The position numbers were made by a program, and so were the translations under genes. The notes below the pieces were generated by a model. That model did no database searches. It was not told where the DNA came from and saw nothing but the letters and a program-made list of their open reading frames with translations. A DNA stretch of 64,000 nucleotides from Pavona decussata (Eukaryota), in NCBI GenBank assembly GCA_977016875.1, contig CDRNST010000008.1, forward strand, positions 4,588,001 through 4,652,000, written 5' to 3'. Shown here in pieces: positions 1-43,837 of this stretch; within the stretch, counting starts at the first letter, position 1; each line of letters begins with the position of its first letter.

Positions 1-121
1 AAACCGTCTGGTCAAGAAACCGGTCAGAAAACGGTGTAAAAGATGACAGGTTTCCCCCATCCCGCTCTTTGATATCAAGGTTCAACTTACAAATCTGCTT
101 TTCGTTCTTTTTCGTTTTTAG

Positions 122-1318
122 CCCAACTGCGTTGCTGAAGTGGTGACGTTCGAGAAGGAGCAGAAAATTATCATTATTTCAAACAGGAAAGTTGAGAAAG
201 GAGAAGAGGTACGCAAACGTTTATTTCCCCAACTGAAATATTTTAAGCGTTTGGAGAGGACACGTCGGTGAATTTGTCTGACCATTCGACCGCAAAGCAC
301 TAGAAATTCCAGTTGGCAAGTGAACTGGAACTATTTCGGAAACTGTGGTGTAGCTCTAGAGTCCTTGCTCGATATCCCTTAAACGAAAAACCGACCAAGT
401 TGAGAGTTTTAGAAATTAAGAATGCCAAACATTTTTTTGGGTGTAGATAACGAAATATGGGCCCGTCATTCTGGGTCTTTCGGAAAGCCGGCTAACCGTT
501 ATGTTGCCCCAAATTTCAGTTTGTGTGATGTTCTACGCGCAGTCCTTGTTGGTCCAATGGATGGTGCCGCCAAAAGCGCGAAGGCTGCACCAAAAGCCAG
601 TGTAATTATTTTTAATTCGGGTGTTCTCCGGTATTTTGTAAATAATCGAGTTCAGCTGTGTTCTTTTCGTGAGCCTGTTTATGGGCCACTTTTCTTCCCA
701 GGAAGCTAGCGCACTTGTCTTAAGCACCTCGCGAATGCACGGAAGGCCGCCTCCACCAGTCTGCAAAGCATAGCACGTTCACGCGCGAGTATTGTTCGCG
801 GAGTTTGCGCACTCGTCAACTAACTTGATGAAAACAGCCTCTACTGACCTAAGAATTCAGACGACACTTTCATTGATATTTCTTTTGGAATTGCGAATAT
901 ACACCGACCTCCCGGGCTACTGAAGTGTAGCCACCTGCACGTGTCAGTACACGCGTGTGCAGCCGAATGCCTTTACACGCGCGAGATCTCGTCGAGTTCT
1001 CTCCTACTCTGCAGACTGGCGCGTCCCGACTAAACTCGCTCAGAAGTGTTCGGCAGTAGGATTGCAAACGCCCCCTTTCCCATGTTTACATCTACGCTGA
1101 AAAGAGTGATATCAGCACAAATTTTCTTTTATGATCATCTGGGTTAGTGCGGTCCTGAGAAGGATTGTTTGAGGACCTTTGAGGTGACATTGACTGACAT
1201 TCATGTTACAACTCTTTTCTTGCAGCTCACTTACGACTACAAGTTTGACTTCGAAGATGAAGAAAACAAGATTCCATGTTTGTGCGGCGCACTTAACTGC
1301 CGAAAATGGATGAATTAA
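122..1318 (+). CDS. KMT2C: 3' end (last two coding exons: 122-208, 1226-1318) of a KMT2C/KMT2D (MLL3/4, trr-type) H3K4 methyltransferase; SET C-terminus and post-SET
   Basis: The exons splice in phase 0 with canonical AG/GT to give [29 protein letters not shown]|[30 protein letters not shown]. This closely matches the recalled KMT2C/D C-terminus ([10 protein letters not shown]...YDYKFDFED...IPCHCGA.NCRKWMN). The rest of the gene lies upstream of the window. KMT2C versus KMT2D orthology cannot be resolved from these two exons. Confidence 0.93.
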
Positions 1319-6632: not shown

Positions 6633-7080
6633 ATGGAAAAAAGCTTAGTGCAATCGGCTTCCCCCAAACGAGGACCGAGCTCCGCCGATGCGAACCTAAG
6701 CATCGTGTTGAATCTCATGTGTCATACAACTTGCCATCGCCAAGGAGGCGAAACTGAGAAATTCGCAAAGAGAGCCATCGAATCGCTGGTGAAAAAACTG
6801 AGAAAGAAGTCTGAAGAGCTAGACTCTTTGATCACCGCGGTCACAAGTAAAGGATCCAAGTCATCAAAATGTGTCACGATTCAGAGAACTTTAGATGGCA
6901 GACTTCAAGTTTGCGAGCGCAAGGGCTTTCCACATGTGATTTACGCTCGCTTGTGGCGATGGCCAGACATTCAAAAAATGGAGATGAAACATTTGGACTT
7001 TTGCCGATACGGCTATGATCTTAAGTACGAGAGTGTTTGTGTCAATCCGTACCATTATGAAAGAATTCGCAGTCCGGCAG
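6633..7080 (+). CDS. Exon 1: Smad4/Medea-type MH1 domain, copy 1
   Basis: Translation includes [22 protein letters not shown]...[35 protein letters not shown]...FC...[11 protein letters not shown]. The Co-Smad signature, beta-hairpin R/Q/K residues and Zn ligands (C,C,C,H) are intact. The ATG is in good context (ggaATGG), there is an in-frame TAG at 6618, and the donor is CAG|GTAAG (phase 1). Confidence 0.93.
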
Positions 7081-10000
7081 GTAAGAATTTATTTTTTCTT
7101 GTTGGAGTTAGTGTGTTGGGTCAATTGTGTGATGTCATGTAGCTAGCCAAAGGAACCAAATGAACGCACGCATTTCTTGTACGTGCTCTCACAAGGTACG
7201 TGATGACAAAATTTACACCAGCGCTATGGTATGTGACAATACTTCATATTGTGGCCGGATTAATCCAACTAACTCGGGTGAATTGGCCTTTGAAGCCCGT
7301 TTTTGTTTTTAATTTTTTTTATTTTTTACATGTCTATGTCACGGGGGAAGTTACTACAGGATTTATAACTTCTCAATCGGGGGTAATATTTTTGTAATTC
7401 GCTCAGGGACATTATTTCCGATCTAAATCATTCGAGCGTTTTGTCGTTGTATTATCGTCGTAACCTTTGGAAAAGCCTTGTGACAAGCGATCTGTTCGTG
7501 CGATATTTTGCGTTAAGACAGGTCGTGCTCGTTCGATTACAAGTACAGTATTTGCCTCACGAATTCATTATCGATAAAGATGTCAAAGAGCGAAATGCTA
7601 ATTTCCTCCTTGGGAGTGGGCAAGGCAGTGTTTTCATCTATTGCTTCGCCATTGTTTGGATAACGAGCGAGTCACTGTTTTGCATTTTTAATTTCTGCTT
7701 GAACGTCGCTTCGTTTTTTGGCCGAATTTTTTGCGCGATTCTTCTTATTGCGCTCTCCAGACTGTGTTTCAGACGTGTTGAGGTCCGAATCACGTCAAAT
7801 GACTGGCGATCGTTTCGTGTGGGGCGAGCGAATTATTTTGTCTGGGTTTTGTTTAAGTATTATTGTTGGTTAGTGCTCATTGTCTGGCTGGAGCGTTTCT
7901 TGTCTGAAAACGTCTGAAATGTCGTCTGCTTTCGCTCTAATTTATTTTGGGACCTGAATTTATTTTCGTCCGAGGCCAGAGCACGCGCGCGCGCTACTTG
8001 GAACCAAGTTTTGGGCTAAAAATCGCTGTTAGAACAGTGAATGTGGGTCGGGTAAAAGGTAAACACAAAACCTAATTAGTATTCAAAAGGGCCTTATTTG
8101 AATATATTTTTATTTCAGTCGGCTTCACTGTCTAGACGATAGCGTGAATTTTACCGCCACTACACGATCAGTTTAGTTATAGATTGCATTCACGCCATTT
8201 TTCCGAGCCAAGCGCACGCTATCCGTGTTCTTCACGGAACAGGTTTTCTTGTGTGGAATGTCTTTGAAATTTTGAATGTCATTTCTGACAACGTGTATTG
8301 TTCGTAATTGTATATCAATTCGAGGGTATTGCATTTAATCTCGAATTCTGTTCTTTCGATCGCCGAAATAACTACCCGAACTTTGATAAAAATCGTTTTT
8401 TAAACGACAGTAGCTTTAGAATAAGTCACCTGTACAGTTTTTCTTAACAGACCCCTATTAATATTTCTCATCTCCTGACAAACAAAACCACAAAAGCCAC
8501 GTAGATGCATTTCAATTGCTTCCTCTTGTCTTGTCACGTAATTAAAATTTCGTGTTCAGCCACGCAGTGCAAAACGTTTCTATTCTCTTCTGGTGGTTTG
8601 CTTTATTTTATTGATCGAATGTTGCTTTTTAAATCGTATTTTTTATGGTTGAAGTTCTCAACTGCTAACAAAGATTACACGGCGGCTTCTTTTGTTTAGG
8701 TCTTTTGCATTTTAAACCCCAGGGGATTGGAGCCACAAGACAAGACATACTAAACATACAAGTTTTCAATTTTTGTTTTAATTTTCGCGTTTTTTACATT
8801 TTTTTGCGATAGATACACATCAGCTTATAAGTCCCTTGAGATGACTTGTAATTTAAAGTGACTTTCACTATAAAGGAACACATTTTAATATTGTCAATGG
8901 TCTTGCTGAACATTCATCTGAGCCAAAAATGTTATTTGTATGTGCTTTAAAGCGTTTGCTTGTGGTTAAGGCAAATTAGCGTTATTAAATTATTACCATA
9001 TCCCTTAAAGGGAATTTTCAGAGGGAATAACAAAGTTTAAATATCTTATGTGAGAGAGAAAAAACTAGCTGAAATCCAGAGTAGCCAAAAATAAAATAAA
9101 GGAAGAAAATTCAACTTTAATAGTGGTGGACACGACAGTGTTTTTGTCTAAGCTTTGCCATTGTTTGGATAATGAACCAGCACAATTAACTTAAACAAAT
9201 TAAGAAATATGTGTTTTTGCACTCCTTTCTCCAATTGCTATTGGTAAATGTGGTGACTGTTGTGTACTTCACTGACTTTCTTGTTCATTTTTAAAAGGAA
9301 CATGGAAATGGTTTGCACATATTTCATTTCCATGGAGGATCATTTGTTGATTTAATTTAATTTTTGTTTCTGTGAAGATTGTCCTCACTAACAGGGAAAT
9401 TTTGGCTGGGGACAGAGATCAGTCCTTGATTTTTGGTGATAATTTCTTTATTTGGATCTATTTTATTTGTTTTCACTCCATCTGACCTGAGCAATGCTTT
9501 TCAATCGACAATGTGTATCAAAGGAAATGATATACTGTTATGATAATTTACAGACAGACAAGTGACCTGTAATGTCATTTTGATCGCTTGAGGGTGCACA
9601 ACGCTATTTCTGTTTTGCAGGTAGTTTCCTGAGATAAATCATAGTTTTGTCTTGTCAGAAATGTTATACAAACTTCTTTATTGTTCTATTTTATAAGATG
9701 ATTTTTTTCCAAGAAGTCTGTTTTATATGACAATTTTTTTCATGTGTGTGCGTACTATTAAAGAGTTGTTTAAGTGATATCGTCCAGGCTACATTATATA
9801 CTCATGGTTTTTTACATAAGCTTAATCCTTTGACATGGTTAAATACTAAACGTTGTTATCCATTTTGTTAGGCCGATATCTCTGCAATGCTTAGTAACTA
9901 TTTCACTTCCTTGACATGTTTTGCTTTTTGCTGAAATTTGTATCACAACAAACATTGCAAGGAAATATATTGCAATTTACACCGTATGTTGTAATAACTG

Positions 10001-13000: not shown

Positions 13001-16000
13001 ATTTAGTAGGTTTGTCCTTAACCGTCTGAGAAATGTTATTCAAAAAACATTTTCCTGTTACAGTTGGACAAAATCTCCTTAGATTTGTTATGAAAAGACT
13101 GTCACATTCTGTTGAAAAAGATGCAAACAAACCCATGGAAGAATTTTAAAATGTAACTAGAGTTTCTAGTGCTGTTTGCATTTCTCATTTTTGGTTAGTA
13201 ACACTTTTCCTGTTCACTTGGAGATTCATAGACACTGTATTAAGTGTTTAGGTGAAATAAAAAGAGCCTTATTATAACCTATCAGGGAAGTGGCTAGGAT
13301 GGCAAAGAAATCATGAGTTAACCTTAAGACCTGCTCAATGGTATGGGGAGGGGGGGGGTCAAATTTCATATACATTTAATCATTTAAAGGTGATCAATTC
13401 CTTTATTCTCATGAGAATACAGTGTAGTTATATTGTAACGAGAAATTACACTTAACAGGTTTAACATGTAATGGGGCCTCAACCTCAACCTGGGTGTCAT
13501 CCCAGGTCATGTGGTTTATGACTGCCATTGAAGAATATATTTTTTCTCTCTATACAGCTGCAACTCTCTCAGTCAAAACATCATCACCAAATTGTGACAA
13601 ATGTGCCTTATCTGTGTTGAAAGAAAGTCCTCCCCAACCAACGACAACATATGAACAGCCTAAATATCTAGAGGCAGGGCCTAGCAACTCTTTGCCAGGA
13701 GCCAGCAACATTCCTTGCTCGGCAGATCCCTGCCCAATCATAGTGAGGAATTTACTTTGGCATGCTGTCCTCCGACATCAGGGTGCTGATGCCGAGAGCT
13801 TTAGTCGAAGGGCTATTGAATCCTTGGTGAAGAAACTCAAGAAAAAATTTTATGAGCTGGACTCGTTAATTGTGGCTATCACCTCAAAGGGACGGCAACC
13901 CTCAAAATGTGTCACTGTTCAAAGGACAATGGATGGGAGATTACAAGTCGGGGATAAGAAGGACTTTCCTCATGTTATTTATGCACGGCTTTGGAGGTGG
14001 CCGGATGTGCACAAGATGGAAATGCGACATAAAGAGTTTTGTCAGAATGGTTATGATACAAAGCATGAAAAAGTCTGTGTTAACCCATACCATTATGAAA
14101 GAGTTCAACCACCAGGTATGTTAAACTTATATTAAATTTGTCTCGGGTGGTGGCCAGCTGTCTTGTGAGAGCAGTCCTGAAAAAGGTTGGAGTTATCAAA
14201 GGAATTCCAAAATACTTTTCATTTTTCCTTATTTGTGATTTCATTCCTTTATATTACTTTTACAGTTATCTGTCAGTAGACTGTTAGTACAGATTTGTGG
14301 GGAAAGTGTTCTTCAGTTAAACCGAAAGTTGAATTTTAAGTTTTGTCGCAACAATGATAGTACATGTAGAATTGGATATTAAGCAAATCACCTGGCTTGT
14401 TAATTCTGTTTCAAAGTTTTCGTCTTGTCACACTGTTAAAAAGAACACTCGGGCTTTTTTTAAATTTACAAGAACTTCATTCCAGTTCACTTACGCACTT
14501 ATGGAAATAAAAAAAAATTATGTATGCAATTTTCAATTTTGAGCAAGTTCATCTTAACCGTTTATGAGCATCCTTACTTTGCACACAATTCATGCCAGGA
14601 ATTAAAATGTAAACAGATATAACTCTTCAGGTGATTGTTTAAATAGTTTTTAAGTAAGATAAGTAAGAGAGTATCTTGGTAGTAACTTTGGAGTTGAGTG
14701 TGTGAAATTTGAATTGTTAGAACTGTTTTTCAACTCACTTCCCATCAAATTTTGCCTATTAACACCTTGGTTGTATTGGAGTTGCAAGACAAGTGTTGAA
14801 CTAGAAAGGATGGCTCAGTTTATGTAACTCTATAGCTGGACTGACTCTACACAAGTATTGTAACACAAAAAGTTTGTCTCCCAAGCAATCCATTTGCACT
14901 ATTTTTTAAACCATTAGCTAATAAGTCATTTGTTTTTCAAATTTGAATTCATGATGTTTTCTTTCTGTTTAATAGATTGGTTTAGGGCTTCCTTGTATGG
15001 GAATGCACACAAGTCGCATGGTATGTCAAATTTGCCTTGATAAATGAAAATTTTAACTTATTCCTGTATATATATAGCCATAATATTAATAATTTTAAAC
15101 CAATGAGGTCACGACATGGAAGAGTGCTTCTGATTTGGTAATAAATCTCATGTTGTACATTGCTTTAAGGTACACGTTTGTAGTCTATAAGGGAGGTTAA
15201 TGACACTATGTTCAAAAGATGATGTTAGGTGGCAAAAGTGAATGGTAACCTTGAGGCTTTGCAAGACAGATATTAGGTGGCAAAAGTGAATGGTAACCTT
15301 GAGGCTTTGCAAGACAGATGTTAGGTGGCATGAATGGAAACCTTGAGGCTTTTTTAGGTGGCAAAAGTGAATGGTAACCTTGAGACTTTGCAAGAGAGTA
15401 AGGCTAGTGCTTTCCTCTGCGAGCAATTGACTTCATGGCCTTTTTAAACACACGACTAAGACCTGGAGTTTTGTGACTGTGAGCCAGCTGAGAGCCTGAT
15501 AATTTTTTTAGCTTTAAAGTATTGCTGTAATAAACTAGTTCTTTCCTGAGACTTTCAGTGTAGCAAGAAGGAGAATCATATCTTACTAAGTTAATTTTTC
15601 AAATGGCCTTAGACAGTTCTGGGTTCAAAGTAATTGGGAATCGAAGTGTGTTTGACAAGAAAAAAGGACTTCCAAGACAATACCATTCAAACAGTGAGAC
15701 TACAAGCTTAAGACCTGTGAAATTACACCAAAATCTGGCAAGACTGGCATATGTTTTATTATTATTAGACCATACGCCAGGTGTTTCTCCATATGACATA
15801 TCAAGAATGAATAAAAAGTGGACTTTTCACCACAGAAAATTCCTTGAATTTTTTTATTTGACATTTTGTGTTTTTAAACTTAAATGTGTTTTGCTTTTGA
15901 TTTTGTGTGACATATTTTGCTAATTAATATTTTTTCCTGTACTTAAAACTCAAGCAGAAGCTGAAAACAGCCGTAAAAGTGATGAGGTAAGTTATTTAAT

Positions 16001-19000
16001 ATGAAAATCAGTTTTAGTTTTAATTAATTTATAGCTGACAGGAAATGAAAGGAACAGACAAAATAGTATATTTGTTCCATTTTCATCACTGAATAAGGTT
16101 GGATTTTTGTTTGTTAGCTACATTTTACCTCAGTTTCAGGTTTACAGTGATTTCAGTGATTTGCTGTATTCAGTGGTCACATGCTTTAGACTTTAACCTC
16201 CTTATTTTTCAAGGGTGTTTATATTACATTTGGTAAAATTGTCAAAGTAGAATTCTTTAGCGGGCCTTGAAGTGAAATTTATCACATCTGTAAATTAAAA
16301 TTCTTTACACTTGTCTATTCCAGCATTAGTGTTTTTTCCTTATTCAAGTTCATTCAATCCCTACAGAGGTCAGTTGGCATTTAGTTTGAGTCGACATGCT
16401 AACAACTTAAGGCTCTTCCATTGACAGTTTAGATTTACAAAGTTCCTTAATTTATTCCTAAGAATATAACAAATTTGGGTCTAAAAATATGATGATTAAA
16501 TTCTTGGCCTGTCATCTCTGAGACAAAATTACTCCTCACTTAATCCAAACAGATGTGCTCGTTTAGATTGGGATCCTGTTTTTCTAATCTTTTCAGTAGT
16601 ATTTGATTGTTAGTTTCCCCTTCCTGTAGGCTACTAGTTGGCCGGTTACCCCTCCAGTTAAATAGTCAACTATACATTATACATGAACCTAGTTTAATGG
16701 CCCTAGCTCCCACGAGTCTCCTGTGGCTCAGTAGTAGAGCATCCAAACTAGTAAATATTGGAAGGTCTTAGGTTCGACTCTTGATAGGAGCACTCTGATT
16801 TTTTCAGAGTATGCCAGTGTGTCTCACTGAATAATACATCGTTCTCTTATACACCATCTGTTCTCATGTTGTTTCATCAGGACTCCAATGGCGGCTCGCT
16901 GTCAAATGAAAATGACGTTGGTGAGAAAAACAGTTGCTACTGTACACACAGCAGTTCTTCTCAAGGAAACAGGAAGAGACAAGAACCTCAAGATGCAAGT
17001 TATTTCAACTCCAGGTTAAAACGGAAGCCTGATTTTGAGGGAGACAGGTATACTTTCAGTAGATTCTTAGGATGGGTAAATGCTCTTGCTCAATAATACT
17101 TTTCCTCTTGATCATTGATACATTCACTTATAAATACATGTACAGTACTCCTATTAAAACCTCACCACAGCGTGCAACTACGATGGTGGTATTTTTCTCC
17201 CAGTTGCTGATAACCTGGACTTCTTTTTGGATCTGAGTTTGGATAGGGGTGTGCTGCCCAGGCTCTGAAACCCTGACCCTATTTATGACAAAAATGTATA
17301 CAGTCGCACCTCTATTAAGCGGCCACCTATTAAGCAGCCACTCTACATTAAGCGGCCACTTTCCAAAGTCCCGAATTATTCATTTGTCAGTAAAGTGCTG
17401 TATTCGATACCTCTATTTAACGGCCAACCTCTATTAAGCGGCCAGTTTTCAAAGTCCCCAGGGTGGCCGCTTAATAGAGGTCCGACTGTACTTTCCCTTT
17501 GTGAACTGTTTAGAGGATAGATTTTATTATTCCCTGTTTAAACAATTACAAAGGTATATGCACTGCAATGTACCTGTATATAGCAAATGCTAATCGTAGG
17601 TTGACTTAAAAAGAAAAAGAGAAAAGTAGTAGTAGAAAAATATACGAATATTAAGTAACTAGCCAATAATGATTCAGTTGGAATAAAACAAAACAAAACA
17701 AAACAAACATGCTGTTTAAAACAGCACTATATTAATGGGGTCCTTTCAAAATATTAAAATTCGGCTTGAATGTGAGGTCTAGAGGACACAAACAACAGGA
17801 ATGAATAAACATGATTATTTAGTTTCCTTTGTTTGTGTCCTCTAAGCCTTATTGTAAAGTTGAATTTTAATATATGGAAAGGAGCCTTCATGAATTTGGA
17901 TGCTGGATTAAAAAAATATCAGGGAAAATTGTCAAGATACAATTGTACGGAAAATATTTCCTATGTACCATCTCTACAGACCTGTCTATGACATCTTGAA
18001 GCCAAAAACTGATACCTTATATTGATAACCATGGGCGGCACATTTCCACACAGGTTATGTATGGGCGTACCCCCCACCCTCCTTCCAGACTTTTTACCTT
18101 GGGTTAAAGAGTTTCTTTTTGTACTGACAGGGCAATGTCAGCTGCTGCATCATCAGTGAGTTATTCTAGCGACAGCGATGAAGATATTGACATTGAAACA
18201 GACTCACCCAAGAGAGTGAAGGTGAATTCATACAGGACTTAGTTTATTGAGATTTTATTCTGATGATAAGCCAATAGAACTTTGATTCAATTTGACCTTA
18301 GGTTGAAACATTCCTTTTTCTACAAAAAAAAAAAAATTAAGTCGCACTATGAGCCTAAGTGACCCACATGGCCAGAGCTTAACTTAGCTTCTGTAGCATG
18401 AAGCAACTACATTTAGCAGTCTGGATGGGATGCTACCTAGTCCATCACAGGGTTATCCCTAGCAGTATGTTGCCGGTAACCATTTATACACCTGGGTGAA
18501 GAGAGACAATGTGGAGCAAAGTTTCTTGTCTAAGGAAACAATACAGCAATTAAGAGTCCAATCTAGCCTTGAACCACTGGCCTTCAGATCTTCCAACCGT
18601 CCGATTAAACAAAAGTCTGTCATGCTAATCACTATACCACTGTGCGTCCTTTCTTTCCTAAGCCATGCTGTATTCTTAGATAGCTATGAAAGTTGTCAGA
18701 GCTTGTGCCTGTTGGTATCTTTGTATGAAGTGCTTACAGTGTACACAATTTCACTTTGTTTATTCCCATGTTCAGCACTGCGATGCTTACATTCATTTGA
18801 CACTTAATTGCTTGTTTTTATAATAAATTAGTTAATTTAATGTTATGCACAATTCGCTGTTGTCTAATTAGCATGTTATTAAACACTTTGTGGTTTAGCT
18901 TTCTCCAAGTGAAACATTGAGTGAGAAAACTGGTCCTAAAACGGATGAGAGGTTAAGCAATTCCCACAGCAATTCAAGAAGGTAAGTTGACTTTAAACTT

Positions 19001-22000
19001 AATTTTGGATATAAACAAATCAGATTTTTTTAAATTTTCTTTTGGTCCAGATCATGGTTATGAATCTGAGACAAAATAAAAAATCAGTCACCTCCTGGTT
19101 TGAAAATTATCTAAAACAAAATAATTTAAACAACAACTTAGATATGATCATGAATTTAAACTGGCTGAAGTTCGGTGGTAAAGGTGAGATTCTGATCTTG
19201 TTTTTTTGGGAATAAATTAGTAACTTCACCTGAATTACAGGTGTAGTTTGTACAGCAAGAGAAACAGGAAACAGATGAAGTAACAGTAATGTTTCCATCA
19301 GTTGTTGCCATGCAATAAGTTCAGGTTCCCAACAAAAATCAAGTTCATTTTCTGTACAAAAATCACATCTCACAACAAATTTTAAGTTTCACAGAATATA
19401 TTAAGACTAGCGGTTCCTAACAGAAGTGAAGTGCTGCAGGCAGATGCTCTTAGCAGTGAAGAGTACTGTAGCATTTGTTTGGCTAAACAGACACTTTTAC
19501 TTGTACAGAATACAATACATTTCCAAAGCATAGATATCAAGACTTAGATGTGTGTATATCCCTTCCTGCAATCATCGTGATAAGCTTTATCTAATCTCGG
19601 TTTTACTAACTATCTCCGTAAATGTTAGTACAGCTGCATGCGGTAACTTTAAAATAACAATATTTTAAAGAATGCCCTAAAAATTACAGTTATAATAAAT
19701 AATCAAAAATCTTGTAACACATATATACAGTGATTGATTCAAATAAAGGTAGTTTATAGTTCCAGTTGAAGTGGTTGCCATCTCTGTGAACAAGAAAATC
19801 ACTGAATCTGCTAAATCGTACATAGATCGGTCATGAAGCCAATGATATTAAACACCATCTGCATTATCTCCTTAAACACTGTACTTATTCAGTTGCTCCA
19901 CTTTACAAAATCCATAATATTATGAATTGATAAGAGAAATATCCTCTAAAACAAAAGATGGCAAAACAAGAATAAAATGTAACAAAGCATACTTCCTCAG
20001 TTTATTTGTCTTTGTTGGTTTTGGACCACATATTAATTTGAAACAATTTGGTGCATTAGCCACTGACAACATTTGTTTAGTTTGGTTTACTTGTAACCAC
20101 AAAACGGTGTGCTGACAACCCAGTTATGTGCTCAGCTATAGTTCAATTGTCTACCTCCTGGCTAACTAATAAACACAATGTGCATTAAATAAGAGAAGAT
20201 CATGTTTAAAATAAATCTTTTTAGAAGAACTTGGAGAATGAGTGCCTTTAATTTTGTAATTTATAGTGATCAAGATTGTTCATAAATTGCTGGGTGTATC
20301 TGAGATATTGTCTTGGCTCTGTGTGAATTCTTTTTTTTCTTGTTTTTGTTTGTTTGTTTCAGAGTACGCTGTGCTTTGTGCAATTGTGTGAACAACAGTC
20401 AGTTGGGGCAAGGTGATCTGATATGTTTTGGAAGAATATCTGGCTTCCCGAGACACTCAACAAGTCCACAGCAATTTCAACAGTTTCCGTCAGGTCACCG
20501 AAATACACATTACCCTGCTGTTAGTAGTTCACTTTCTTCCTATGGCAGGGGAAGCCCCCATGATGACGAATACCAAGACCACAGTCCTTATTCCTTGAAA
20601 TACAGGGCCAGTCAAGGGGAAGGCCCAGCCATCAGGTACTCAGATTTACAGGCTTTGTTAACTTGTTTGTAGCTATGTTCATAATTTTGAGCCTTTCCTG
20701 ACTAAAACTGAACAGTAGTAATTTTTTGTAATACGTCATTTGCGAAGAGTTTGCAGTTTACCATAACAGGCATGTGGCATTCGATTTGTTTTCAAGAGTA
20801 CCACTGTCTTGTAGGTTTTGTATGCATGATATTCTGGTTCAAAATTGTTTGAAAGATGTTATAAAGAACTTGTAGATTCAGAGGTGTTTGTAGTGACAAC
20901 ATAATCACTGCAGCAGCTGGTTCATACACTGCACCAGCAAATCAGCTGATTGGTCTCATCAGTAGTTTAAAATTTTAATATTAATTTTAATTATTTTAAT
21001 ATTTTAATTGATTTTTATTTTATTTTAATCAGTATTTTAATATTTTATTTAAAAATAAAGTTGTCATTATTATTACTATCAATTAAAATTTTCATGTCCT
21101 GCTTGTATTAACACACAGATCACTAACAGTAGATGTAATAAGATATGACAACTCCAATGTGCTTTAGTGTGATCCAGGTGTTCAAAATGTAAAGCTAACC
21201 ATAGTATTAACCAGGGCCCCATTGTTCAAAGCTTAACCTAGGATTTGTGTGAACTTTGGTTACTGTAAAAGTTGTTTAACAATTTAGTTAAGAGAGTTTT
21301 CCATACAATGTCTGCAGTTCAGTTTTGAATTAGACTGTCCTGATAACCTTAAAATGAGTGAGATGAAAAGCTTGGTTAACTGTTAATCGGCTTTGACAAA
21401 CAATTAGGGTCAGAGATAATGAACGATGCATATAAGAAGTGCCTAATTTATTTATTGAAACTTCAGGCCAAGGAGCCCTGATGGAAAATCTAATGTGGTG
21501 AACAGTTCCAGTAACAACAGGCTCACACCTGCTCCTCAAGAAGACATTTCCAATGTTGGCTTCAGAGAGGAGCCTGAGCTGGTTGATCTGTGTGACATGT
21601 CTGGTCACATATGGGTCCATGAGAGATGTGCGGCATGGACACTGGCTTCCATTGCTACCAAGTCTGCAGTGGAATTTACTGTTGAGTTAACAAATCAGAT
21701 TCTCTCAAAGGTACAACACTCATAATGCCAAGTGATTGAGATAGGATTATGTAATGTTCAAAAAACGAGCAGAGTGTTTAAAAAACGTTTTAGACCCAAT
21801 AAAACACGTGCTACCAGTTTTTTGAATGGCTTCAAAAACATTCCTGGAAAAGCGTGTGTCAAGAGAGTTCATAACAATTATGCTTTTGTGAACTAAAATT
21901 AGCATACGAGAAAAACATTTAACACTGCATACTAATAAGGAGGAGGTTTTATCGGGTTTTAAAACCACTGCACGTGATGTTTTATCGACCATTTCATAGG

Positions 22001-25000
22001 TCAATAGGCTTATAAATTATTAATGAGTTTTTGAAGTAATGTTTAAAAAACAAGCAGGATTGTTTTACCTGGTTTAAAACAGCTGCGAGTTTTTTGAACA
22101 GCTTCAAAAACATTCCTGGAAAAGCATGTGTCGATAGAGTTCATAACAGTTATGCCTAAATTGTGAACGTTGGAAATTAGCATACGAGAAAAACACCGCA
22201 TACTAATTAGGATTGTTTTATCAGCTGATAAAGCACCACATACTAATAAGGAGGGGGTTTATCAATGTAAAGTCACTGTACTGCATGAGTTTTGAAGTCA
22301 ACTTAATGCTCATAGCCCAAATGAAAGCTTGAATAAGAAAAATATTTTTTACTACATGTATTTAATGCAATTTAACTAGCCACTTGAAATATGGTGGGAT
22401 AATTATCCTCACAATCAGTGATGTTAGTTGGCAGCTGTAACCTCCTCTTAAAAGGTATAATGTGCCTTTGTTGTTGTGAGTTTTTACCTTGAGCCTGTCA
22501 TTTCAATTTGCCATCTTGTTTTCTTCAGCCCCATTTGTCTGGACCCAGTTCATTGCCCCTTTACTTTATTGATGCAAAGTGGTCCATTGGCCTTTTCCAG
22601 TGTTCCATTTGTTAAATAGTTGTGATCTTCTTTGCAGAAGTGCAGTTTTTGTGGCCGTTTTGGTGCTAGTGTTGTATGTGAGATGTCTGACTGCGGGAGG
22701 ATATACCACTACCCATGCGCAATGGTTGCAAGGGCCTATCAGGTGAGAATAAACAGATTAGAAACTAATTCAAAACTCCGGGGTAAGTTTTGGGTTTAAG
22801 GGAAAGCCAGGTTAATTTAATTTTCAGGTACAAAAAAGGTATGGGGTGTTTTGGGGTTTAGTTTTAGCCTGTGAGGATTTTTTGGGGTGTTAAAGATTAG
22901 CTTCATTTGCACCCACTACCACTGGGCCTGGGGAATCATCCCAAGATTATCCATGTACGTACCATGATCACTGGATAATTAGTTTTGATTAGCTTAGCTG
23001 CCATGGGATATCAGTCATTATTAAAAACTGAATCATTGTATAATGCAATTCGAGGGATTTGATTGCCTTAGCGGCCATGGTATATGAGCCATTATACCAT
23101 GGCCGAGAAATGGCGACCATAAAATTGTCTGCTGGTTGTTCTTGCCCAGCGAAATCAGTAAGATCTAGCAATATTTCGTGATTGTTTTTAATAAAACAAT
23201 TATTCCACTTGCGCTTGTTGGATGTGAGATGATTATAGCCAACTCGGCGCTACGCGTCTTGTTGGGTATCTATTATCTCATATCCAATGCGTGCTTGTGG
23301 AATAATATTGTTAATTATACCATGCCCAAGAAATAGCGACCATTAAATTGTCCTCTGGTCTTTCTTGCAAAATGAAATCAGCAAGGTCTAGCAAAATTTC
23401 TTGGTTGTTTTAATAAAACAATTATCCTGTTGGCACTTGTTGGATATGGGATAATCGTAGCCAACTTGATGCTATGTCCTAGTTGACTATTTTTATCTAT
23501 CATCTCATATCCAACGCATGCTCATGGAATAATTGTCAAGTATAATCAGAAACTAATTATTTTTAATTACCTTTTCTTTTTGATAACAGGACATAAAAAC
23601 AATGAAACTTTACTGTGTTAGTCATGATGACATTATAAGAAGAGTAGGTGAGTTTTCCCGCATGTTAACATTTCCATTCCTAAATGATAGGAGACAAAAA
23701 GATATCAGTAAAATAGGTTTGCTAAAATATCGAAAGTACTGTGCATGACTAAATAAGGTTTTGTTTGCAATTTACAGCATTTTGTGACAGATGCCATCAG
23801 GGAGGAGAATTATCACAGCTGTTACTGTGCACCAGATGCAACTGCCATTATCATAGTTACTGTTGCTCTCCTCCTGTGCGTGCTACAGAGACTGTAAGGG
23901 TGGGCTGGGAATGTGCACAGTGCAAATCCTGCCAGTTTTGCAGGTAAAGTTCAACACATGTTATTAATGCTTTAAGTTGTTTCTCACAATATCACATGAT
24001 CTTGAAGGCCAATGTTGCTGTGTGCTCAAGAGGGTGTCGGTGAACAACTGTATTTTTGTTTTGTTTGAAGAAGAATTGAGTTCTTGCTAGCCACATGTAT
24101 ACAGCAAAGGCTGCACTTGGCACAAAATGACTGTTTATTCTCTGTTAAAACGTGTTGCAGGGTTCACATGATCATAGAAAGATCATGGAATTTGAAATTT
24201 GTATTCGTTAGATCTGAAAAAAGTACTGGTAATGGAAGTTTGAAAAATTGTTTCCCAAGGGTCATGGAAAAGACAAAAATCATTACTATCAGTTTTTTAC
24301 CAAAGCTGTGTTGGAGTATTGTCAAAAAAATAAAGAAATTTGGCAAACTTTTGTGTGAAGCATCAAAATGTCAGTGGAGCATTTCACTCCTTTTGTCAAT
24401 TTTGAGGTCATGAAATCATCATGAAAGGTTCTCTCCCAGTTCAGTGTGAACCATGTGTTGTCGCCATCTTCTTTTGACCATTGATGGTCTGTCATTAGTC
24501 AAACTTTGCAACCTGGAGCTATTGACAAGAAACAAATTTGGTTTATGAGTTAACTGTGTCAATGCTAAAAGATTAACGTAAGCCAAGGTTGCAGTGCTGC
24601 ATGCCATACATTTCAGGATAAACTTTCAGTTTAATTTAATAATAATTATTAGTTTGAAATAACTTTCTCAAAATTGTTTTGTTTTAGGGTGTGTTTCTAG
24701 TTTCGTATTGTTGATGACTGGAATAAAATTAATTTATAATCGTGTAATGAATTCTGCAGACAATCTTCTCCCAAAGACAAGCTGTTAATATGCAGCAGCT
24801 GTGACAAAGGTTACCATCCACTGTGTACAGTACCTATCACCAATTCAACAGAAAAGTTAGGCTGGAAGTGTGAGGTTTGTAACCTTTTCAAAGGTCTCAT
24901 TGTTCCATTTGATGTGCCATGTGCCACATGAATTTTGTTGGTAATTTTGGCAGTGAAAACCTGTAATTATCAAGTGAATGTTAATTGATCATTCATTTAC

Positions 25001-26486
25001 TGTGGCAGTTGATGAAATTGTCCTCCATTTTAATAGTGATGTTGAGTTCACAGTAGATTATGGTCCTCATTAATGATAAGGGAACTGGGAACCCATGCTT
25101 GCTGCCTACATCTCTTATTATATTGCTTGCAGCTACAAAACATTTTGAGTGGGATGCAAGTGACTAAGTTGTGTGATACTTTAACACCAAAGTAAAGTTG
25201 CATCCATCATTTAACAGTATGTTCATTACCTGATTGTGTCTGTGCATTCAGATTTGTTTCCACTAACTGTTACATGGTCATGTTATAATTATTTTTATCC
25301 TGCTGTGACTTGGGGGAAAATGGAAGGACGTTGATTTGCTTCTGATCAGTGCAAGATACTTGATAATTAATTTAATACATTTTTACTTCCAAACAGAAAT
25401 GCCGTCAGTGCAGACAGTGCAGAACAAAAAAGACATCACGATGGCACATTGATTATACCTTGTGTGATGTGTGTTACCAAAACAAACATAAGACAAATCG
25501 ATGTCCGATGTGTAATACCGAGCAGGGCAATCATAGAGTGGTGCAGTGTGACTCCTGCAGTAGGTGGGTGTAGGCTTACATTTGAGGCCAAATCAAATTA
25601 TCAAGCCTGTTTTTTTTTTTATCACTGTTAAGTATGTGATGCCAAAAACATACCAAAAACATGCTAGTATTTTGCTTGATTGACAAGTTATCAGACAATT
25701 TTCAACTGGACACTCAAAAAGATTTGAAAAGGATATTTCATCCTTTTCACCCTGGAGACTTTTCAAACAACATTTCAAAACATTTACATGACGTATATGC
25801 CTTTATTTTGTTTCAGGTGGATTCATACAATGTGTGACAGCATCACGGATGACATTTACAGGAAACTAGAGAGAGATCGCAGCATTATCTACGTATGCAA
25901 GCTTTGCAGAGATGAAGTTGAAAAAATTAAAAAGGAGTGCAGAAGAGAGGTAAGTATTAATGGACAAGCTGACAGTGCATTAATGGATTGTGACTTTGTG
26001 AAGGTGTTGGGTGGGTGGGGTGGGTAGGGTTACAGAGAAGGGGATGGGGATGGGGATGGGGAAAGGAAAATTAAGTAATTCTGTTGACAGGAACTCACTC
26101 TTAAGAGTTATTCTTAAAATTTAGCGTGGTACATATGGGTCAAATATGTGATTCACACTCTCCCATTACCAGCACTCTTTCACTCCATGCATCTGTATAT
26201 GGTTGTTTAGTAATATACAGTCCTGACCTTCTGTATCTGTTGTTTGCAGATGAAAACAGATCCTGTGGAATTGGAGGAGGTATCACCAGTCACTACTATG
26301 GTGTTAGCACAAGAAATGCACAAGGGACACAACACCAAGCAAATCTCTAGCCTCACCACCAGCATGGCAACTACACCGTGTTCAATGACGTGGATGACGT
26401 CTGAGCCTGTCCAGTGGTCCAGATTAAGGATGACATATTCTTTTGAGTATTTCATTATGAAGCAGTATGGTAAAGTGTTACTTTAG
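6633..26486 (+). CDS. Multi-exon gene for a tandem Smad4-like MH1-MH1 plus KMT2C-type ePHD/PHD/PHD/PHD protein (~957 aa; no MH2, no SET)
   Basis: Fifteen exons, all GT-AG and phase-compatible: 6633-7080, 13558-14115, 15958-15986, 16881-17047, 18131-18221, 18899-18981, 20363-20635, 21467-21710, 22638-22742, 23590-23647, 23778-23943, 24760-24874, 25397-25563, 25817-25949, 26250-26486. The total is 2874 nt (958 codons) with no internal stop. The MH1 and PHD exons are secure. The small linker exons 3-6 and the last exon rest on splice signals and phase only. Confidence 0.8.
7758..8137. promoter_or_regulatory. Intronic Smad-binding element cluster (7 CAGAC/GTCTG in ~170 bp plus palindromic GTCTAGAC)
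   Basis: CAGAC at 7758 and 7770; GTCTG at 7840, 7882, 7902, 7912 and 7924; GTCTAGAC at 8130-8137. Motif match only. Confidence 0.5.
10443..10832. mobile_element. TTAA-flanked MITE (Kolobok-like AG...CT termini)
   Basis: TTAA-AGGGGAAGTATCATG ... CATGATACTTCCCCT-TTAA, a perfect 15-bp terminal inverted repeat (TIR) with no coding capacity. Confidence 0.8.
12636..13098 (-). mobile_element. Degenerate 3' fragment of a CR1/L2-like LINE
   Basis: The minus strand reads [40 protein letters not shown], resembling a CR1-type ORF2 C-terminus. It is followed by a T-rich 3' UTR and an ATAAAT/A-rich tail. Confidence 0.55.
13558..14115 (+). CDS. Exon 2: linker plus Smad4-type MH1 domain, copy 2
   Basis: Translation includes [22 protein letters not shown]...[35 protein letters not shown]...FC...[11 protein letters not shown]. 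Acceptor is ttttctctctatacag and donor is CAG|GTATG, giving a symmetric phase 1-1 exon of 558 nt. Confidence 0.93.
15221..15396. repeat. 48-bp minisatellite, about 3.5 copies
   Basis: Unit GAT(G/A)TTAGGTGGCAAAAGTGAATGGTAACCTTGAGGCTTTGCAAGACA at 15221 and 15269, truncated at 15317, and again near 15354. Confidence 0.9.
16683..16860 (+). mobile_element. tRNA-derived SINE-like repeat (copy A)
   Basis: A-box-like TGGCTCAGTAGTAGAGC and B-box GGTTCGACTC. A homologous copy lies at 41045-41240. Confidence 0.65.
17299..17490. mobile_element. TA-flanked Tc1/mariner(pogo)-type MITE
   Basis: TA-CAGTCGCACCTCTATTAAGCGGCCACC ... GGTGGCCGCTTAATAGAGGTCCGACTG-TA, with internal repeats of CTATTAAGCGGCCA. Confidence 0.85.
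17733..17890. repeat. Palindromic (hairpin) MITE-like repeat
   Basis: Nested inverted arms: CCTTTC..ATATTAAAATTCGGCTT / AAGTTGAATTTTAATAT..GAAAGG and AGAGGACACAAACAA / TTGTTTGTGTCCTCT. Confidence 0.6.
18340..18646 (-). mobile_element. tRNA-derived SINE with a conserved central domain
   Basis: On the minus strand, a tRNA-like head (GTGGTATAGTGATTAGC...GGTTCAAGGC) is followed by TTTCCTTAGACAAGAAACTTTGCTCCACATTGTCTCTCTTCACCCAGGTGTATAAATGG, a core resembling CORE-type metazoan SINEs. Confidence 0.7.
20363..25949 (+). CDS. Exons 7-14: KMT2C-like N-terminal ePHD, PHD, PHD, Zn-knuckle and PHD cluster
   Basis: ePHD: [14 protein letters not shown]...WVHERCAAW...[28 protein letters not shown]...LYCVSH. 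PHD: CDRC..CTRC..HSYC..GWECAQC. PHD: [23 protein letters not shown]. Knuckle: CRQC..WH..CDVCYQ. PHD: [23 protein letters not shown]. Order and motifs follow the recalled KMT2C N-terminus (CAFCYCGEKSSLGQGDL...WAHHRC...YHYPCA...CDKGYH...RWVHLECD). Confidence 0.9.
21760..22265. repeat. Dispersed repeat with an internal tandem duplication; a third copy lies at about 38345-38590
   Basis: TTTTTGAA..GCTTCAAAAACATTCCTGGAAAAGC.TGTGTC.A.AGAGTTCATAACA...AATTAGCATACGAGAAAAACA occurs near 21819, 22091 and 38357. Confidence 0.85.
23020..23540. repeat. Tandemly duplicated palindromic dispersed repeat
   Basis: Two ~220-bp copies (about 23093-23315 and 23318-23540), each with an inverted core ATTATTCCAC.....TTGGAT..GAGAT ... 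ATCTCATATCCAA....GTGGAATAAT. Confidence 0.75.
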
Positions 26487-32996: not shown

Positions 32997-43462
<10,466 letters not shown>

Positions 43463-43837
43463 CTTGATTTCACAATATACTACACCTTCCCCCTCTCCGC
43501 TCCGTAGTGAGGCGTCTGAAGCTAACTGAAAACAAAGCACGAGTGGGGTAGAGTGGGTAGGGGGTAGGGTATATGTTTTTCCAACAAAAACCTAAGAACA
43601 TCCAAAACAATTTTTTTTTTAAGGAAGTGTTAAGGACGTATCCTAGGCCAAGGTTTTGTAAGAGGTTTTCCTGTAGAGTGAAAAAGCCTCGAATGACACC
43701 GTCCACTACCTTTTAAGGCCGAGGCTTTTGAAAGACCCACCCCCACCCGTATCCGTCCCCCAAACGAACGAAGAGGCCGAGGACCCAGTCTTTTTCGCTG
43801 CTGCAGGTTGCAGATTTATATCTCTTCCATTTTGAAA
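43463..43837. promoter_or_regulatory. Bidirectional promoter region shared by PHYHD1 and SOD2
   Basis: The divergent ATGs are separated by only 375 bp. The region is locally CpG-retaining, with G-rich and C-rich tracts. Confidence 0.75.

What the first reader, a model, noticed from the sequence alone, without database searches (positions are those of the whole stretch)
6633..26486. Chimeric gene joining tandem Smad4 MH1 domains to the KMT2C PHD cluster, with no MH2 and no SET
Seen in the sequence: 15 GT-AG exons join in frame into ~957 aa, in the order MH1, MH1, Ser/acidic linker, ePHD, PHD, PHD, Zn-knuckle, PHD, short tail. All Zn ligands and the MH1 DNA-contact residues are retained, so it does not look like a decaying pseudogene. 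Established: Smads pair MH1 with MH2, which mediates receptor coupling and trimerisation. This PHD array normally sits at the N-terminus of KMT2C/D, where it is a chromatin and protein-interaction module (in mammals the PHD region contacts the ASXL/BAP1 complex). I know no characterised protein with this architecture, though I could not search. Inference: it is a signal-independent factor that binds Smad elements and hard-wires TGF-beta/BMP target DNA to COMPASS/BAP1-type chromatin machinery, acting as a primer or as a competitor of Smad complexes. Automated pipelines would probably label it just Smad4-like or KMT2C-like.
Basis: partly seen in the sequence, partly recalled or inferred. Interest (0 to 1): 0.97.

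Follow-up and report, generated by a model that had tools for sequence, protein, structure and literature searches.

The report
Cnidarian double-MH1 plus PHD-cluster gene
A real, expressed coral gene joins two Smad4-type DNA-binding domains to a copy of the KMT2C PHD-finger cluster, with neither the signal-receiving MH2 domain nor the SET enzyme domain. The same unstudied gene is conserved in sea anemones, jellyfish and Hydra, so it is an old cnidarian chromatin or transcription factor and not a local accident.

Summary
Window 6633-26486 (+) holds one gene of 16 GT-AG coding exons (973 aa). The order is two Smad4-type MH1 domains, a Ser/acidic linker, an ePHD-PHD-PHD-knuckle-PHD cluster colinear with the KMT2C N-terminus, and a short tail. 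There is no MH2 and no SET.

RNA contigs of the same species join exons 1 to 7. A second assembled haplotype keeps every exon and splice site (dN/dS 0.08). Transcript-derived ORFs of other corals cover the whole model.

It is not a local chimera. The same architecture occurs in Acropora, Porites, Nematostella, Actinostola, Rhopilema, Sanderia, Hydra, Hydractinia and Clytia, labelled uncharacterized, Smad-like or KMT2C-like. In hexacorals it lies directly downstream of the full-length KMT2C gene, the likely source of its PHD cluster.

The base-contacting MH1 residues and the Zn ligands are conserved. The best reading is signal-independent binding of Smad motifs by a covalent MH1 pair.

The proposed ASXL/BAP1 link is weakened. 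The four acidic groove residues that bind ASXL in MLL3/4 PHD2/3 are lost here but kept in the coral's own KMT2C. I found no paper describing this family.

The parts
6633..7080 (+). Coding exon 1: start codon and first Smad4-type MH1 domain (MH1a). The donor is CAG|GTAAG in phase 1.
   Evidence: Pfam MH1 E 1.3e-38. Best PDB match is human Smad4 MH1 5mey at 217 bits, against 138 or less for R-Smads. Borders. An RNA contig joins it to exon 2 (X3 record 16).
13558..14115 (+). Coding exon 2: inter-MH1 linker and second Smad4-type MH1 domain (MH1b). It is a symmetric phase 1-1 exon.
   Evidence: Pfam MH1 E 1.4e-34. PDB 5mey 183 bits. Acceptor. RNA joint 14115|14976 in runs X1, X2 and X3.
14976..15020 (+). 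Coding exon 3 (45 nt): the conserved DWF motif that follows MH1b.
   Evidence: tblastn of P0001, sequence, RNA joints on both sides.
15955..15986 (+). Coding exon 4: a micro-exon of 32 nt, or 29 nt from the alternative NAGNAG acceptor at 15958.
   Evidence: Frame requirement and orthologue alignment. RNA joints 15020|15955 (X1), 15020|15958 (X2, X3) and 15986|16881 (X1-X3).
16881..17047 (+). Coding exon 5: variable linker.
   Evidence: tblastn of P0001 and P0165. RNA joints 15986|16881 and 17047|18131.
18131..18221 (+). Coding exon 6: Ser/acidic linker.
   Evidence: Splice scan. RNA joints 17047|18131 and 18221|18899 in X3.
18899..18981 (+). Coding exon 7: linker. The donor is AAG|GTAAGT in phase 2, which fits exon 8.
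   Evidence: Alignment to P0001 and P0165. It lies in X3 record 17, which runs on for 487 nt beyond 18981, outside the laid stretch.
20363..20635 (+). Coding exon 8: first Cys pair of the ePHD (CxxC) and a variable insert.
   Evidence: C480 and C483 of P0001 are invariant in 13 orthologues.
21467..21710 (+). Coding exon 9: ePHD middle part (WVHxxCAAW).
   Evidence: Colinear with canonical KMT2C at C8:4556179-4556277, 39% identity.
22638..22742 (+). Coding exon 10: ePHD (zf-HC5HC2H).
   Evidence: Pfam PF13771 E 5.8e-08. 57% identity to canonical KMT2C at C8:4557014-4557118.
23590..23647 (+). Coding exon 11: end of the ePHD (C..H).
   Evidence: C681 and H684 are invariant.
23778..23943 (+). Coding exon 12: PHD finger corresponding to KMT2C/D PHD2.
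   Evidence: Pfam PHD E 1.3e-07. 40% identity to canonical KMT2C at C8:4558520-4558678. PDB best matches are 9atn (KMT2D) and 2ysm (MLL3).
24760..24874 (+). Coding exon 13: PHD finger corresponding to KMT2C/D PHD3.
   Evidence: Pfam PHD E 7.4e-08. 41% identity to C8:4559634-4559744..
25397..25563 (+). Coding exon 14: Zn knuckle and start of the last PHD-type finger.
   Evidence: 41-42% identity to canonical KMT2C at C8:4560191-4560334.
25817..25949 (+). Coding exon 15: end of the last PHD-type finger.
   Evidence: In canonical KMT2C the same segment is continuous with the previous one.
26250..26486 (+). Coding exon 16: tail with the family-specific C-terminal motif (W-S-R ... Y-S-F-E-Y) and the stop codon.
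   Evidence: The motif is 100% identical to Porites and 89% to Nematostella, and its core is kept in Hydra and Rhopilema. No counterpart exists in canonical KMT2C.
122..1318 (+). Context: the last two coding exons (SET end and post-SET, then stop) of the full-length KMT2C/D-type gene. That gene starts about 32 kb upstream of the window on the same strand. It is the likely source of the PHD cluster.
   Evidence: The same tandem order occurs in Porites and Nematostella.

Best explanation
Shown: this is one intact, transcribed gene of a pan-cnidarian orthologous family. It encodes two Smad4-derived MH1 domains in tandem, a disordered Ser/acidic linker, a copy of the N-terminal ePHD-PHD2-PHD3-knuckle-PHD cluster of KMT2C/D, and a short tail ending in a family-specific motif. 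It has no MH2 and no SET.

Inferred origin: in the cnidarian stem lineage a Smad4 MH1-coding exon was copied twice, and all copies share the same phase-1 donor at the same codon. These exons were joined to a tandem duplicate of the 5' part of the neighbouring KMT2C gene. In hexacorals the gene still lies 3-5 kb downstream of KMT2C.

[quoted passage not shown] The covalent MH1 pair replaces in cis the MH2-driven oligomerisation that normally brings several weak MH1 domains onto paired sites. Binding should therefore not depend on receptor phosphorylation. The PHD cluster and the C-terminal motif then connect the bound site to chromatin or to partner proteins. That ligand is unknown and is probably not the ASXL helix bound by MLL3/4.

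My odds: one real gene with this architecture 0.97; sequence-specific DNA binding by the MH1 pair 0.65; action at BMP/TGF-beta target elements 0.45.
For: Gene model and frame.

RNA, same species: GT..AG joints 14115|14976, 15020|15955 or 15958, 15986|16881, 17047|18131 and 18221|18899. One contig carries the exon-1 tail joined to exon 2. One contig runs on 487 nt beyond exon 7.

Second haplotype: C200 is colinear and keeps all splice sites, with 36 synonymous and 12 non-synonymous differences, dN/dS 0.084. Introns are 86-94% identical and carry indels.

Full-length uninterrupted ORFs on 4.0-4.4 kb contigs of public runs, which I take to be transcript assemblies (P0001, P0165, P0166, P0168), and RefSeq models of Acropora cover all exons.

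Same Pfam architecture in Nematostella, Hydra, Hydractinia, Rhopilema, Sanderia and Clytia.

Identity to this gene: MH1a and MH1b are 88-89% identical to Nematostella and 63-70% to Hydra and Rhopilema, while the linkers are 10-27%.

Smad4 type: 217 and 183 bits to human Smad4 MH1, against 138 or less for R-Smads. In the tree all family MH1s fall on the Smad4 side (100/100), and the MH1b clade (100/99) spans Anthozoa and Medusozoa.

Hairpin and zinc residues are conserved (residue roles from PMC5727232).

The PHD part is best matched by KMT2D and MLL3 structures. It is colinear with the neighbouring KMT2C at 39-57% identity.

The tandem KMT2C-then-this-gene order is found in three hexacorals.

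The MH1-exon donor has the same phase in canonical Smad4.
Against: No DNA-binding, localisation or partner data exist for any member, so the function is inferred from domains only.

The hairpin tip differs from the otherwise invariant Smad hairpin. Positions 85-86 are C-E in MH1a and G-D/E in MH1b, and G89 is D in MH1b. An acidic tip could lower affinity or change specificity.

Exon 7->8 and the downstream junctions were not seen directly in RNA of this species, because read laying was limited to 6 kb and one call. They rest on orthologous transcript ORFs and on the unplaced 487 nt of one contig.

The full-length AlphaFold model was poor (mean pLDDT 47.7; only the PHD region reached about 75-90), so it says nothing about domain contacts.

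The ligand of the PHD cluster is unknown.
Confidence: 0.6

Rival explanations
1. Competitor or decoy. The protein occupies Smad-binding elements but cannot recruit MH2-dependent co-activators. It therefore acts mainly as a signal-independent repressor or buffer of BMP/TGF-beta target genes. This is a sub-case of the best explanation with the opposite sign of effect.
For: MH1 hairpins are intact and Smad4-type, and there is no MH2. A dense CAGAC/GTCTG cluster lies in a conserved part of its own intron 1, which would fit feedback.
Against: A simple decoy would not need a 400-aa PHD cluster and a C-terminal motif conserved from corals to Hydra. There are no functional data.
Confidence: 0.2
2. The PHD cluster contacts ASXL/BAP1 (PR-DUB) or COMPASS, so Smad motifs are hard-wired to that machinery.
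For: The PHD-PHD pair is the closest relative of MLL4 and MLL3 PHD2/3 among solved structures (82 bits). PHD2/3 of MLL3/4 binds the ASXL MBH helix (PMC11161652).
Against: The four acidic residues lining the ASXL groove (D257, E272, D285, E292) are S, Q, K, S here. They are S, Q, K and R or S in the coral orthologues, T, M, P, M in Nematostella, and variable in medusozoans. D285K and E292K are the kind of change that weakens or abolishes binding in the human protein. The coral's canonical KMT2C keeps E, D, D, D. No SET, FYRN/FYRC or other COMPASS-docking region is present.
Confidence: 0.1
3. The MH1 domains no longer read DNA. They serve as protein-interaction or nuclear-import modules, and the protein works as a soluble mimic of the KMT2C N-terminus that titrates its partners.
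For: The hairpin tips are altered with an added acidic residue in both copies. The gene lies next to KMT2C and may share its regulation.
Against: Arg81, Gln83, Lys88 and Asp79 equivalents and the zinc ligands are invariant or nearly invariant over the whole phylum in both copies. That is hard to explain without DNA reading.
Confidence: 0.08
4. Artefact: two or three separate genes (MH1-only and PHD-only), alternative first exons, or a mis-assembly read as one gene.
For: Exon 2 is phase-symmetric, so skipping exon 2, or starting at it, would stay in frame. A. digitifera and A. cervicornis annotations split or truncate the gene.
Against: RNA contigs join exon 1 to exon 2, and exon 2 to exons 3-7 and beyond. 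Uninterrupted 958-979-aa ORFs with both MH1s and all PHDs lie on 4.0-4.4 kb contigs of public runs from other corals, which I take to be transcript assemblies. Two haplotypes and three other genomes show the same order.
Confidence: 0.02

Closest known systems
Smad4 (co-Smad; human SMAD4 MH1, PDB 5MEY/3QSV; this coral's canonical Smad4 on contig C177)
   Same: Both N-terminal domains are Smad4-type MH1. They score 217 and 183 bits to human Smad4 MH1, keep the same zinc site and base-contacting Arg/Gln/Lys, and keep the KKLKK-type basic helix. The intron phase at the end of the MH1 exon is also the same.
   Different: There are two MH1 copies in tandem. There is no linker SAD region and no MH2, so no R-Smad trimerisation. 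The hairpin tip is changed: A85-G86 becomes C-E in MH1a and G-D/E in MH1b. The C-terminal half is a PHD cluster.
KMT2C/KMT2D (MLL3/MLL4) N-terminal PHD cluster (PDB 9ATN, 2YSM, 9YL3; the coral's own KMT2C-type gene immediately upstream)
   Same: Same order of ePHD, PHD2, PHD3, knuckle and PHD, exon-by-exon colinear with the neighbouring KMT2C at 39-57% identity. Best PDB matches are KMT2D and MLL3.
   Different: It lacks the second PHD cluster, the Q-rich regions, FYRN/FYRC and SET/post-SET. The ASXL-binding acidic groove residues are not kept. Two extra introns split segments that are continuous in KMT2C. The C-terminal motif is absent from KMT2C.
Drosophila Lpt (Lost PHDs of Trr), recalled from my own knowledge and not tested here
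   Same: It is a precedent for the KMT2C/D N-terminal PHD clusters existing as a separate polypeptide without SET.
   Different: Lpt is a gene-fission product that replaces the N-terminus of the only KMT2C/D gene and works with Trr. Here the full-length KMT2C is retained next door, only cluster 1 is copied, and it is fused to MH1 domains.
Nematostella 'smad4-like', called 'truncated' in PMC11846459 (NV2.15308) and NvSmad4-like (JGI 248037) in PMC3531958
   Same: It is a Smad4-related cnidarian gene said to lack part of the protein, and it is the only literature mention of an unusual cnidarian Smad4 paralogue that I found.
   Different: The published NvSmad4-like primers encode M-A-N-A at the start and F-H-Y-E-R-V-V at the MH1 end. 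These do not match the Nematostella orthologue P0170 (M-E-K-N..., Y-H-Y-E-R-I-R and Y-H-Y-D-R-V-Q). It therefore appears to be another gene. No paper mentions PHD fingers or a second MH1.
Database entries for the family itself: XP_029179571.1 (A. millepora LOC114947054), XP_001629655.3 (N. vectensis LOC5509135), H. vulgaris LOC100199160, A0A7M5X184 (Clytia, 'SMAD family member')
   Same: These are orthologues with the same length (931-974 aa), the same Pfam architecture and the same C-terminal motif.
   Different: They are only predicted and unnamed. None of the locus names occurs in the paper library.

Membership tests
Smad family (co-Smad/Smad4) | MH1 domain of Smad4 type with the beta-hairpin Arg/Gln/Lys and the C-C-C-H zinc site | tested here: met
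   Pfam MH1 in both copies. Best PDB match is Smad4. The tree places both inside the Smad4 side, 100/100 against R-Smads. Residues.
Smad family (co-Smad/Smad4) | C-terminal MH2 domain | tested here: not met
   The whole-genome MH2 search gives six matches, none on C8 or C200. The ORF ends in exon 16. No MH2 is found in any orthologue.
KMT2C/KMT2D (MLL3/4) methyltransferases | N-terminal ePHD-PHD2-PHD3-PHD cluster | tested here: met
   Colinear with the neighbouring canonical KMT2C. Best PDB matches are KMT2D and MLL3.
KMT2C/KMT2D (MLL3/4) methyltransferases | SET/post-SET catalytic domain and FYRN/FYRC | tested here: not met
   The stop is at 26484-26486. Orthologues end at the same place. SET, post-SET and FYRN are found only in the upstream gene.
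KMT2C/KMT2D (MLL3/4) methyltransferases | ASXL MBH-binding groove of PHD2/3 (D257, E272, K274, D285, V290, E292 of MLL4) | tested here: not met
   Here the residues are S, Q, K, K, I, S. The family is variable at these positions. Canonical coral KMT2C has E, D, K, D, V, D (PMC11161652).
Cnidarian double-MH1/PHD orthologous group (unnamed; LOC114947054, LOC5509135, LOC100199160) | Two MH1 domains followed by ePHD and PHD fingers in one protein of about 930-980 aa | tested here: met
Cnidarian double-MH1/PHD orthologous group (unnamed; LOC114947054, LOC5509135, LOC100199160) | Family-specific signatures: Q-V-C-E-R-K-G hairpin in MH1a, Q-V-G-D/E-K/R-K-D in MH1b, D-W-F after MH1b, and the C-terminal W-S-R...Y-S-F-E-Y motif | tested here: met
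   Alignment of 11 and of 13 sequences.
Cnidarian double-MH1/PHD orthologous group (unnamed; LOC114947054, LOC5509135, LOC100199160) | Position directly downstream of the full-length KMT2C gene on the same strand (hexacorals) | tested here: met
   Window, Porites and Nematostella. Not seen within 10 kb in Hydra or Rhopilema.

The most novel reading that the evidence does not exclude
Cnidarians carry a receptor-independent branch of the Smad system. A covalently paired, Smad4-derived DNA reader sits permanently on paired Smad-binding motifs. Through a re-purposed KMT2C-type PHD module and a private C-terminal motif, it sets the chromatin state of BMP/TGF-beta response elements. Its own conserved intron-1 Smad-motif cluster and its fixed position behind KMT2C would reflect feedback and shared regulation.
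Probability: 0.3. Interest if true: 0.8.

Novelty: new variant of a known kind. Interest (0 to 1): 0.62.

Why it matters
Smad proteins are taken to need MH2 for everything that makes them signal transducers, and their DNA-binding hairpin is regarded as invariant across animals. This family is kept under strong constraint in the phylum that is the sister group of bilaterians. It uses two Smad4 MH1 domains without MH2, has a changed hairpin tip, and is fused to a chromatin-type PHD module copied from KMT2C.

If it binds Smad motifs, published cnidarian BMP/Smad target maps and motif analyses may include sites occupied by a factor nobody has looked at. The gene would also be a natural experiment on how far MH1 pairing alone can replace MH2-driven oligomerisation.

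It is directly testable in Nematostella, Hydra, Hydractinia and Clytia, which all have genetic tools.

It is also a clean case of domain shuffling by local duplication, with the donor gene still adjacent in the three hexacorals examined.

Tried and rejected
Searches used single exons by reference and the database orthologues (P0001 and others). The joined model was built only inside scripts, for frame, length, alignment and dN/dS.
- Read laying (one call, 6 kb) could not span exon 2 to exon 8 (6.25 kb). I laid 13400-19399, so exon 7->8 and later joints are not shown directly in this species. The metatranscriptome run X5 covered only intronic repeats.
- The full-length AlphaFold2 model from a 13-sequence alignment was poor (mean pLDDT 47.7, MH1 and tail below 50). 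It gave no information on tail docking or domain contacts, and I ran no fold search on it.
- The ESM Atlas look-up of the C-terminal tail gave no usable hit. tblastn of the tail against the canonical KMT2C region found nothing.
- The look-up of encoding contigs had no record for P0170 and P0154. P0305 served for Nematostella instead.
- The whole-genome FYRC search found only one match on C303 and none in the upstream KMT2C, although FYRN and SET are there. This is probably exon splitting, and I did not pursue it.
- The search for relatives of the PHD half with other N-termini found only cnidarian family members plus partial or hypothetical proteins of Lymnaea and Cichlidogyrus carrying only ePHD/PHD families (my reading: KMT2C fragments) and two weak hits. 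There is no sign of the family outside Cnidaria, within that tool's length and word limits.
- Complex prediction was not used. I claim no binding partner, and a failed run would not count against one.
- Separate genes, alternative first exons and an assembly chimera were considered and rejected.

Full report
**What is in the sequence**

On the + strand between 6633 and 26486 there are two large exons that Pfam calls MH1 (E 1.3e-38 and 1.4e-34). Downstream lies a series of small Cys/His-rich exons with PHD and PHD-like hits.

I worked out borders and phases from the sequence and from alignments to orthologous proteins. The result is 16 coding exons, all with AG/GT borders, joining into one ORF of 2922 nt (973 aa) with the stop at 26484-26486.

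- A micro-exon at 15955-15986 is needed to keep the frame between 14976-15020 and 16881-17047.
- The exon at 21467-21710 is used in its long form.

I did not send the joined model to any search tool. Searches used single exons by reference or database orthologues.

**Is it one transcript, and is the assembly right?**

- Second haplotype. The whole genome holds a second copy of the locus on contig C200. It is colinear with the window. Introns are 86-94% identical and carry indels, while the exons have no indel, no stop and unchanged splice sites. There are 36 synonymous and 12 non-synonymous differences, dN/dS 0.084. This looks like the other haplotype. It excludes a join made by the assembler and shows purifying selection.
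- RNA of the same organism. Contigs of three runs show GT..AG joints at 14115|14976, 15020|15955 and 15020|15958 (a NAGNAG pair of acceptors), 15986|16881, 17047|18131 and 18221|18899.
- Exon 1 to exon 2. One 946-nt contig carries the end of exon 1 joined to the start of exon 2. The aligner placed the exon-1 tail on the paralogous end of exon 2, hence the reported 'goes back 552'. The nine letters between and the loose end are exon-1 sequence.
- Beyond exon 7. One 1029-nt contig runs from exon 2 through exon 7 and has 487 more letters beyond 18981, outside the 6-kb stretch I was allowed to lay.
- Other corals. An exon-2 search of the 1.8-billion representative library returned P0001, a 962-aa ORF on a 4327-nt contig of a public run, with two MH1 matches. 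I take such contigs to be transcript assemblies, because they carry the whole ORF without introns. P0001 and similar ORFs from other corals map onto every exon of the window in order.
- Not shown directly here. Exon 7->8 and later joints rest on these orthologues and on the unplaced 487 nt.

**It is a family, not a local chimera**

- Acropora. P0001's cluster holds RefSeq models of A. millepora, A. muricata and A. palmata (958 aa, 'uncharacterized'). It also holds A. cervicornis 'Mothers against decapentaplegic-like protein 4' (769 aa). In A. digitifera the gene is split into an 'uncharacterized' piece and a 'histone-lysine N-methyltransferase 2C-like' piece.
- Other cnidarians. A search with P0001 finds the same Pfam set in Porites lutea, Nematostella vectensis (LOC5509135), Actinostola, Hydra vulgaris (LOC100199160), Hydractinia, Clytia, Rhopilema and Sanderia. 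Pfam scans of representative members, including those of Nematostella, Hydra, Hydractinia, Clytia, Rhopilema and Sanderia, each show two MH1 domains.
- Conservation by domain. Against the window protein, the MH1 domains are 98% identical in Porites, 88-89% in Nematostella and 63-70% in Hydra and Rhopilema. The linkers are 10-27% identical outside corals. The last 29 residues are 100% identical in Porites and 89% in Nematostella, with a W-S-R...Y-S-F-E-Y core kept in medusozoans.
- Outside Cnidaria.

**Origin**

- MH1 type. Both MH1 copies are Smad4-type. They score 217 and 183 bits to human Smad4 MH1, against 138 or less for R-Smads.
- MH1 tree. All family MH1s fall with Smad4 against the coral's R-Smads (100/100). 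The MH1b clade (100/99) includes anthozoans and medusozoans, so the internal duplication predates the cnidarian radiation. The coral's canonical Smad4 (contig C177, which has an MH2) groups with bilaterian Smad4.
- Exon structure. The MH1 exon of canonical Smad4 ends with the same phase-1 donor at the same Gly codon as exons 1 and 2. This points to exon-level DNA duplication.
- PHD cluster. The nearest paralogue in the genome lies about 50 kb upstream on the same contig and strand. Reading that region shows a full-length KMT2C/D-type gene: ePHD, two PHD clusters, giant Q-rich exons, FYRN and SET. Its last exons (SET end, post-SET, stop near 1318) lie inside the window, 5.3 kb before exon 1.
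- Colinearity. The window's PHD exons are colinear with PHD cluster 1 of that gene at 39-57% identity.
- Microsynteny. The same order, KMT2C and then this gene on the same strand with 3-4 kb between them, is found in Porites and Nematostella. It was not seen within 10 kb in Hydra or Rhopilema.
- Simplest history. A tandem duplicate of the 5' part of KMT2C became fused to duplicated Smad4 MH1 exons before the cnidarian classes split.

**How it most likely works**

- What the MH1 domains keep. In Smad4 the hairpin residues Arg81, Gln83 and Lys88 read GTCT and GGC(GC|CG) motifs, and Asp79 holds Arg81 (PMC5727232). Both copies keep all four and the zinc ligands, across the whole family.
- What differs. 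The hairpin tip is A85-G86 in Smads, C-E in MH1a and G-D/E in MH1b. G89 is D in MH1b. The cited paper describes the hairpin as otherwise invariant in metazoan Smads, so this change is conserved and may tune affinity or specificity.
- The inference. The two MH1s are tied together by a 55-residue linker and there is no MH2. I infer that the protein reads paired Smad motifs on its own, independently of receptor phosphorylation.
- The PHD pair. It is the closest relative of MLL4 and MLL3 PHD2/3 among solved structures (82 bits; next is DPF3 at 53). In MLL3/4 that module binds the ASXL MBH helix in a groove lined by D257, E272, D285 and E292. D285K nearly abolishes binding, and D257K, E272K and E292K reduce it 14- to 40-fold (PMC11161652). 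I mapped these positions through the 9ATN alignment.

| Protein | D257 | E272 | D285 | E292 |
|---|---|---|---|---|
| This gene | S | Q | K | S |
| Coral orthologues | S | Q | K | R or S |
| Nematostella | T | M | P | M |
| Medusozoans | variable | variable | variable | variable |
| Coral's own KMT2C | E | D | D | D |

- Consequence. The ligand of the PHD cluster and of the C-terminal motif is unknown.
- Model quality. The full-length AlphaFold model was too poor to help.

**What is known**

The paper library has no description of a tandem-MH1 or MH1-PHD protein and no mention of the locus names.

Nematostella papers list a '"truncated" smad4-like' (NV2.15308) among BMP effectors (PMC11846459, PMC13193452). 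They also list an NvSmad4-like (JGI 248037) expressed in the blastula central domain (PMC3531958).

The published primers of NvSmad4-like encode M-A-N-A and F-H-Y-E-R-V-V, which do not match the Nematostella orthologue P0170. It therefore seems to be a different gene. I could not check NV2.15308.

**Verdict**

The gene is real, expressed, constrained and old.

Signal-independent reading of Smad motifs is the best inference. The COMPASS/BAP1 wiring is not supported.

The architecture is an undescribed variant built from known domains. It already sits in public databases as unnamed predictions in at least a dozen cnidarian species.

Noticed in passing
window 1-1318 (+), continuing upstream to about G000:C8:4555765: The full-length KMT2C/D-type gene of this coral ends in the window, with a SET exon at 122-about 220 and a post-SET exon with its stop at about 1316-1318. 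It has two giant Q-rich exons of about 1400 and 1500 codons upstream (L006, L007).
   Followed up: partly
window 7107-8556 (intron 1): The first 1.45 kb of intron 1 aligns to intron 1 of the Porites lutea orthologue at 74% identity over 1482 bp, while the rest of the intron does not align. The part around 7717-7914 is about 88% identical when translated, but the frame is broken in Porites, so it is non-coding. Within it, 7758-8137 holds 7 CAGAC/GTCTG (window mean 0.73 per 380 bp, the maximum in the window) and one GTCTAGAC. Porites has its densest cluster (8) at the matching place. This could be a Smad-responsive or autoregulatory enhancer.
   Followed up: partly
window 15955/15958: There is a NAGNAG tandem acceptor at the micro-exon. 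RNA contigs of one run use 15955 and those of two runs use 15958, giving isoforms that differ by one codon.
   Followed up: yes
window 16682-16800 (+), tRNA-like at 16717-16792: An intronic tRNA-derived repeat (Rfam tRNA, 36 bits) has over 1800 first-look candidates in the genome, including tandem arrays on C402. It accounts for the very high RNA-contig depth there. Further high-depth repeat spots lie at about 17400-17600 and 18400-18600.
   Followed up: partly
window 39119-39724 (+); 43697-45626 (+); 57968-58366 (-): Downstream of the gene lie a reverse-transcriptase remnant, exons that look like a Mn-superoxide dismutase, and an enoyl-CoA hydratase/HIBCH-like exon. I named these from their translations alone, not from a family search.
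   Followed up: no
P0066, P0074, P0095 (Pfam scan of P0066 and P0074): Other proteins with two MH1 matches come from metagenome or ENA assemblies of unknown organisms. One (P0066, 650 aa) carries a C2H2 zinc finger and no PHD or MH2. Tandem MH1 without MH2 may have arisen more than once.
   Followed up: no
G000:C93:6353110-6373168 (-): Two R-Smad-type genes (MH1 plus MH2 each) lie in tandem about 13.7 kb apart on contig C93, a recent duplication of an R-Smad in this coral.
   Followed up: no
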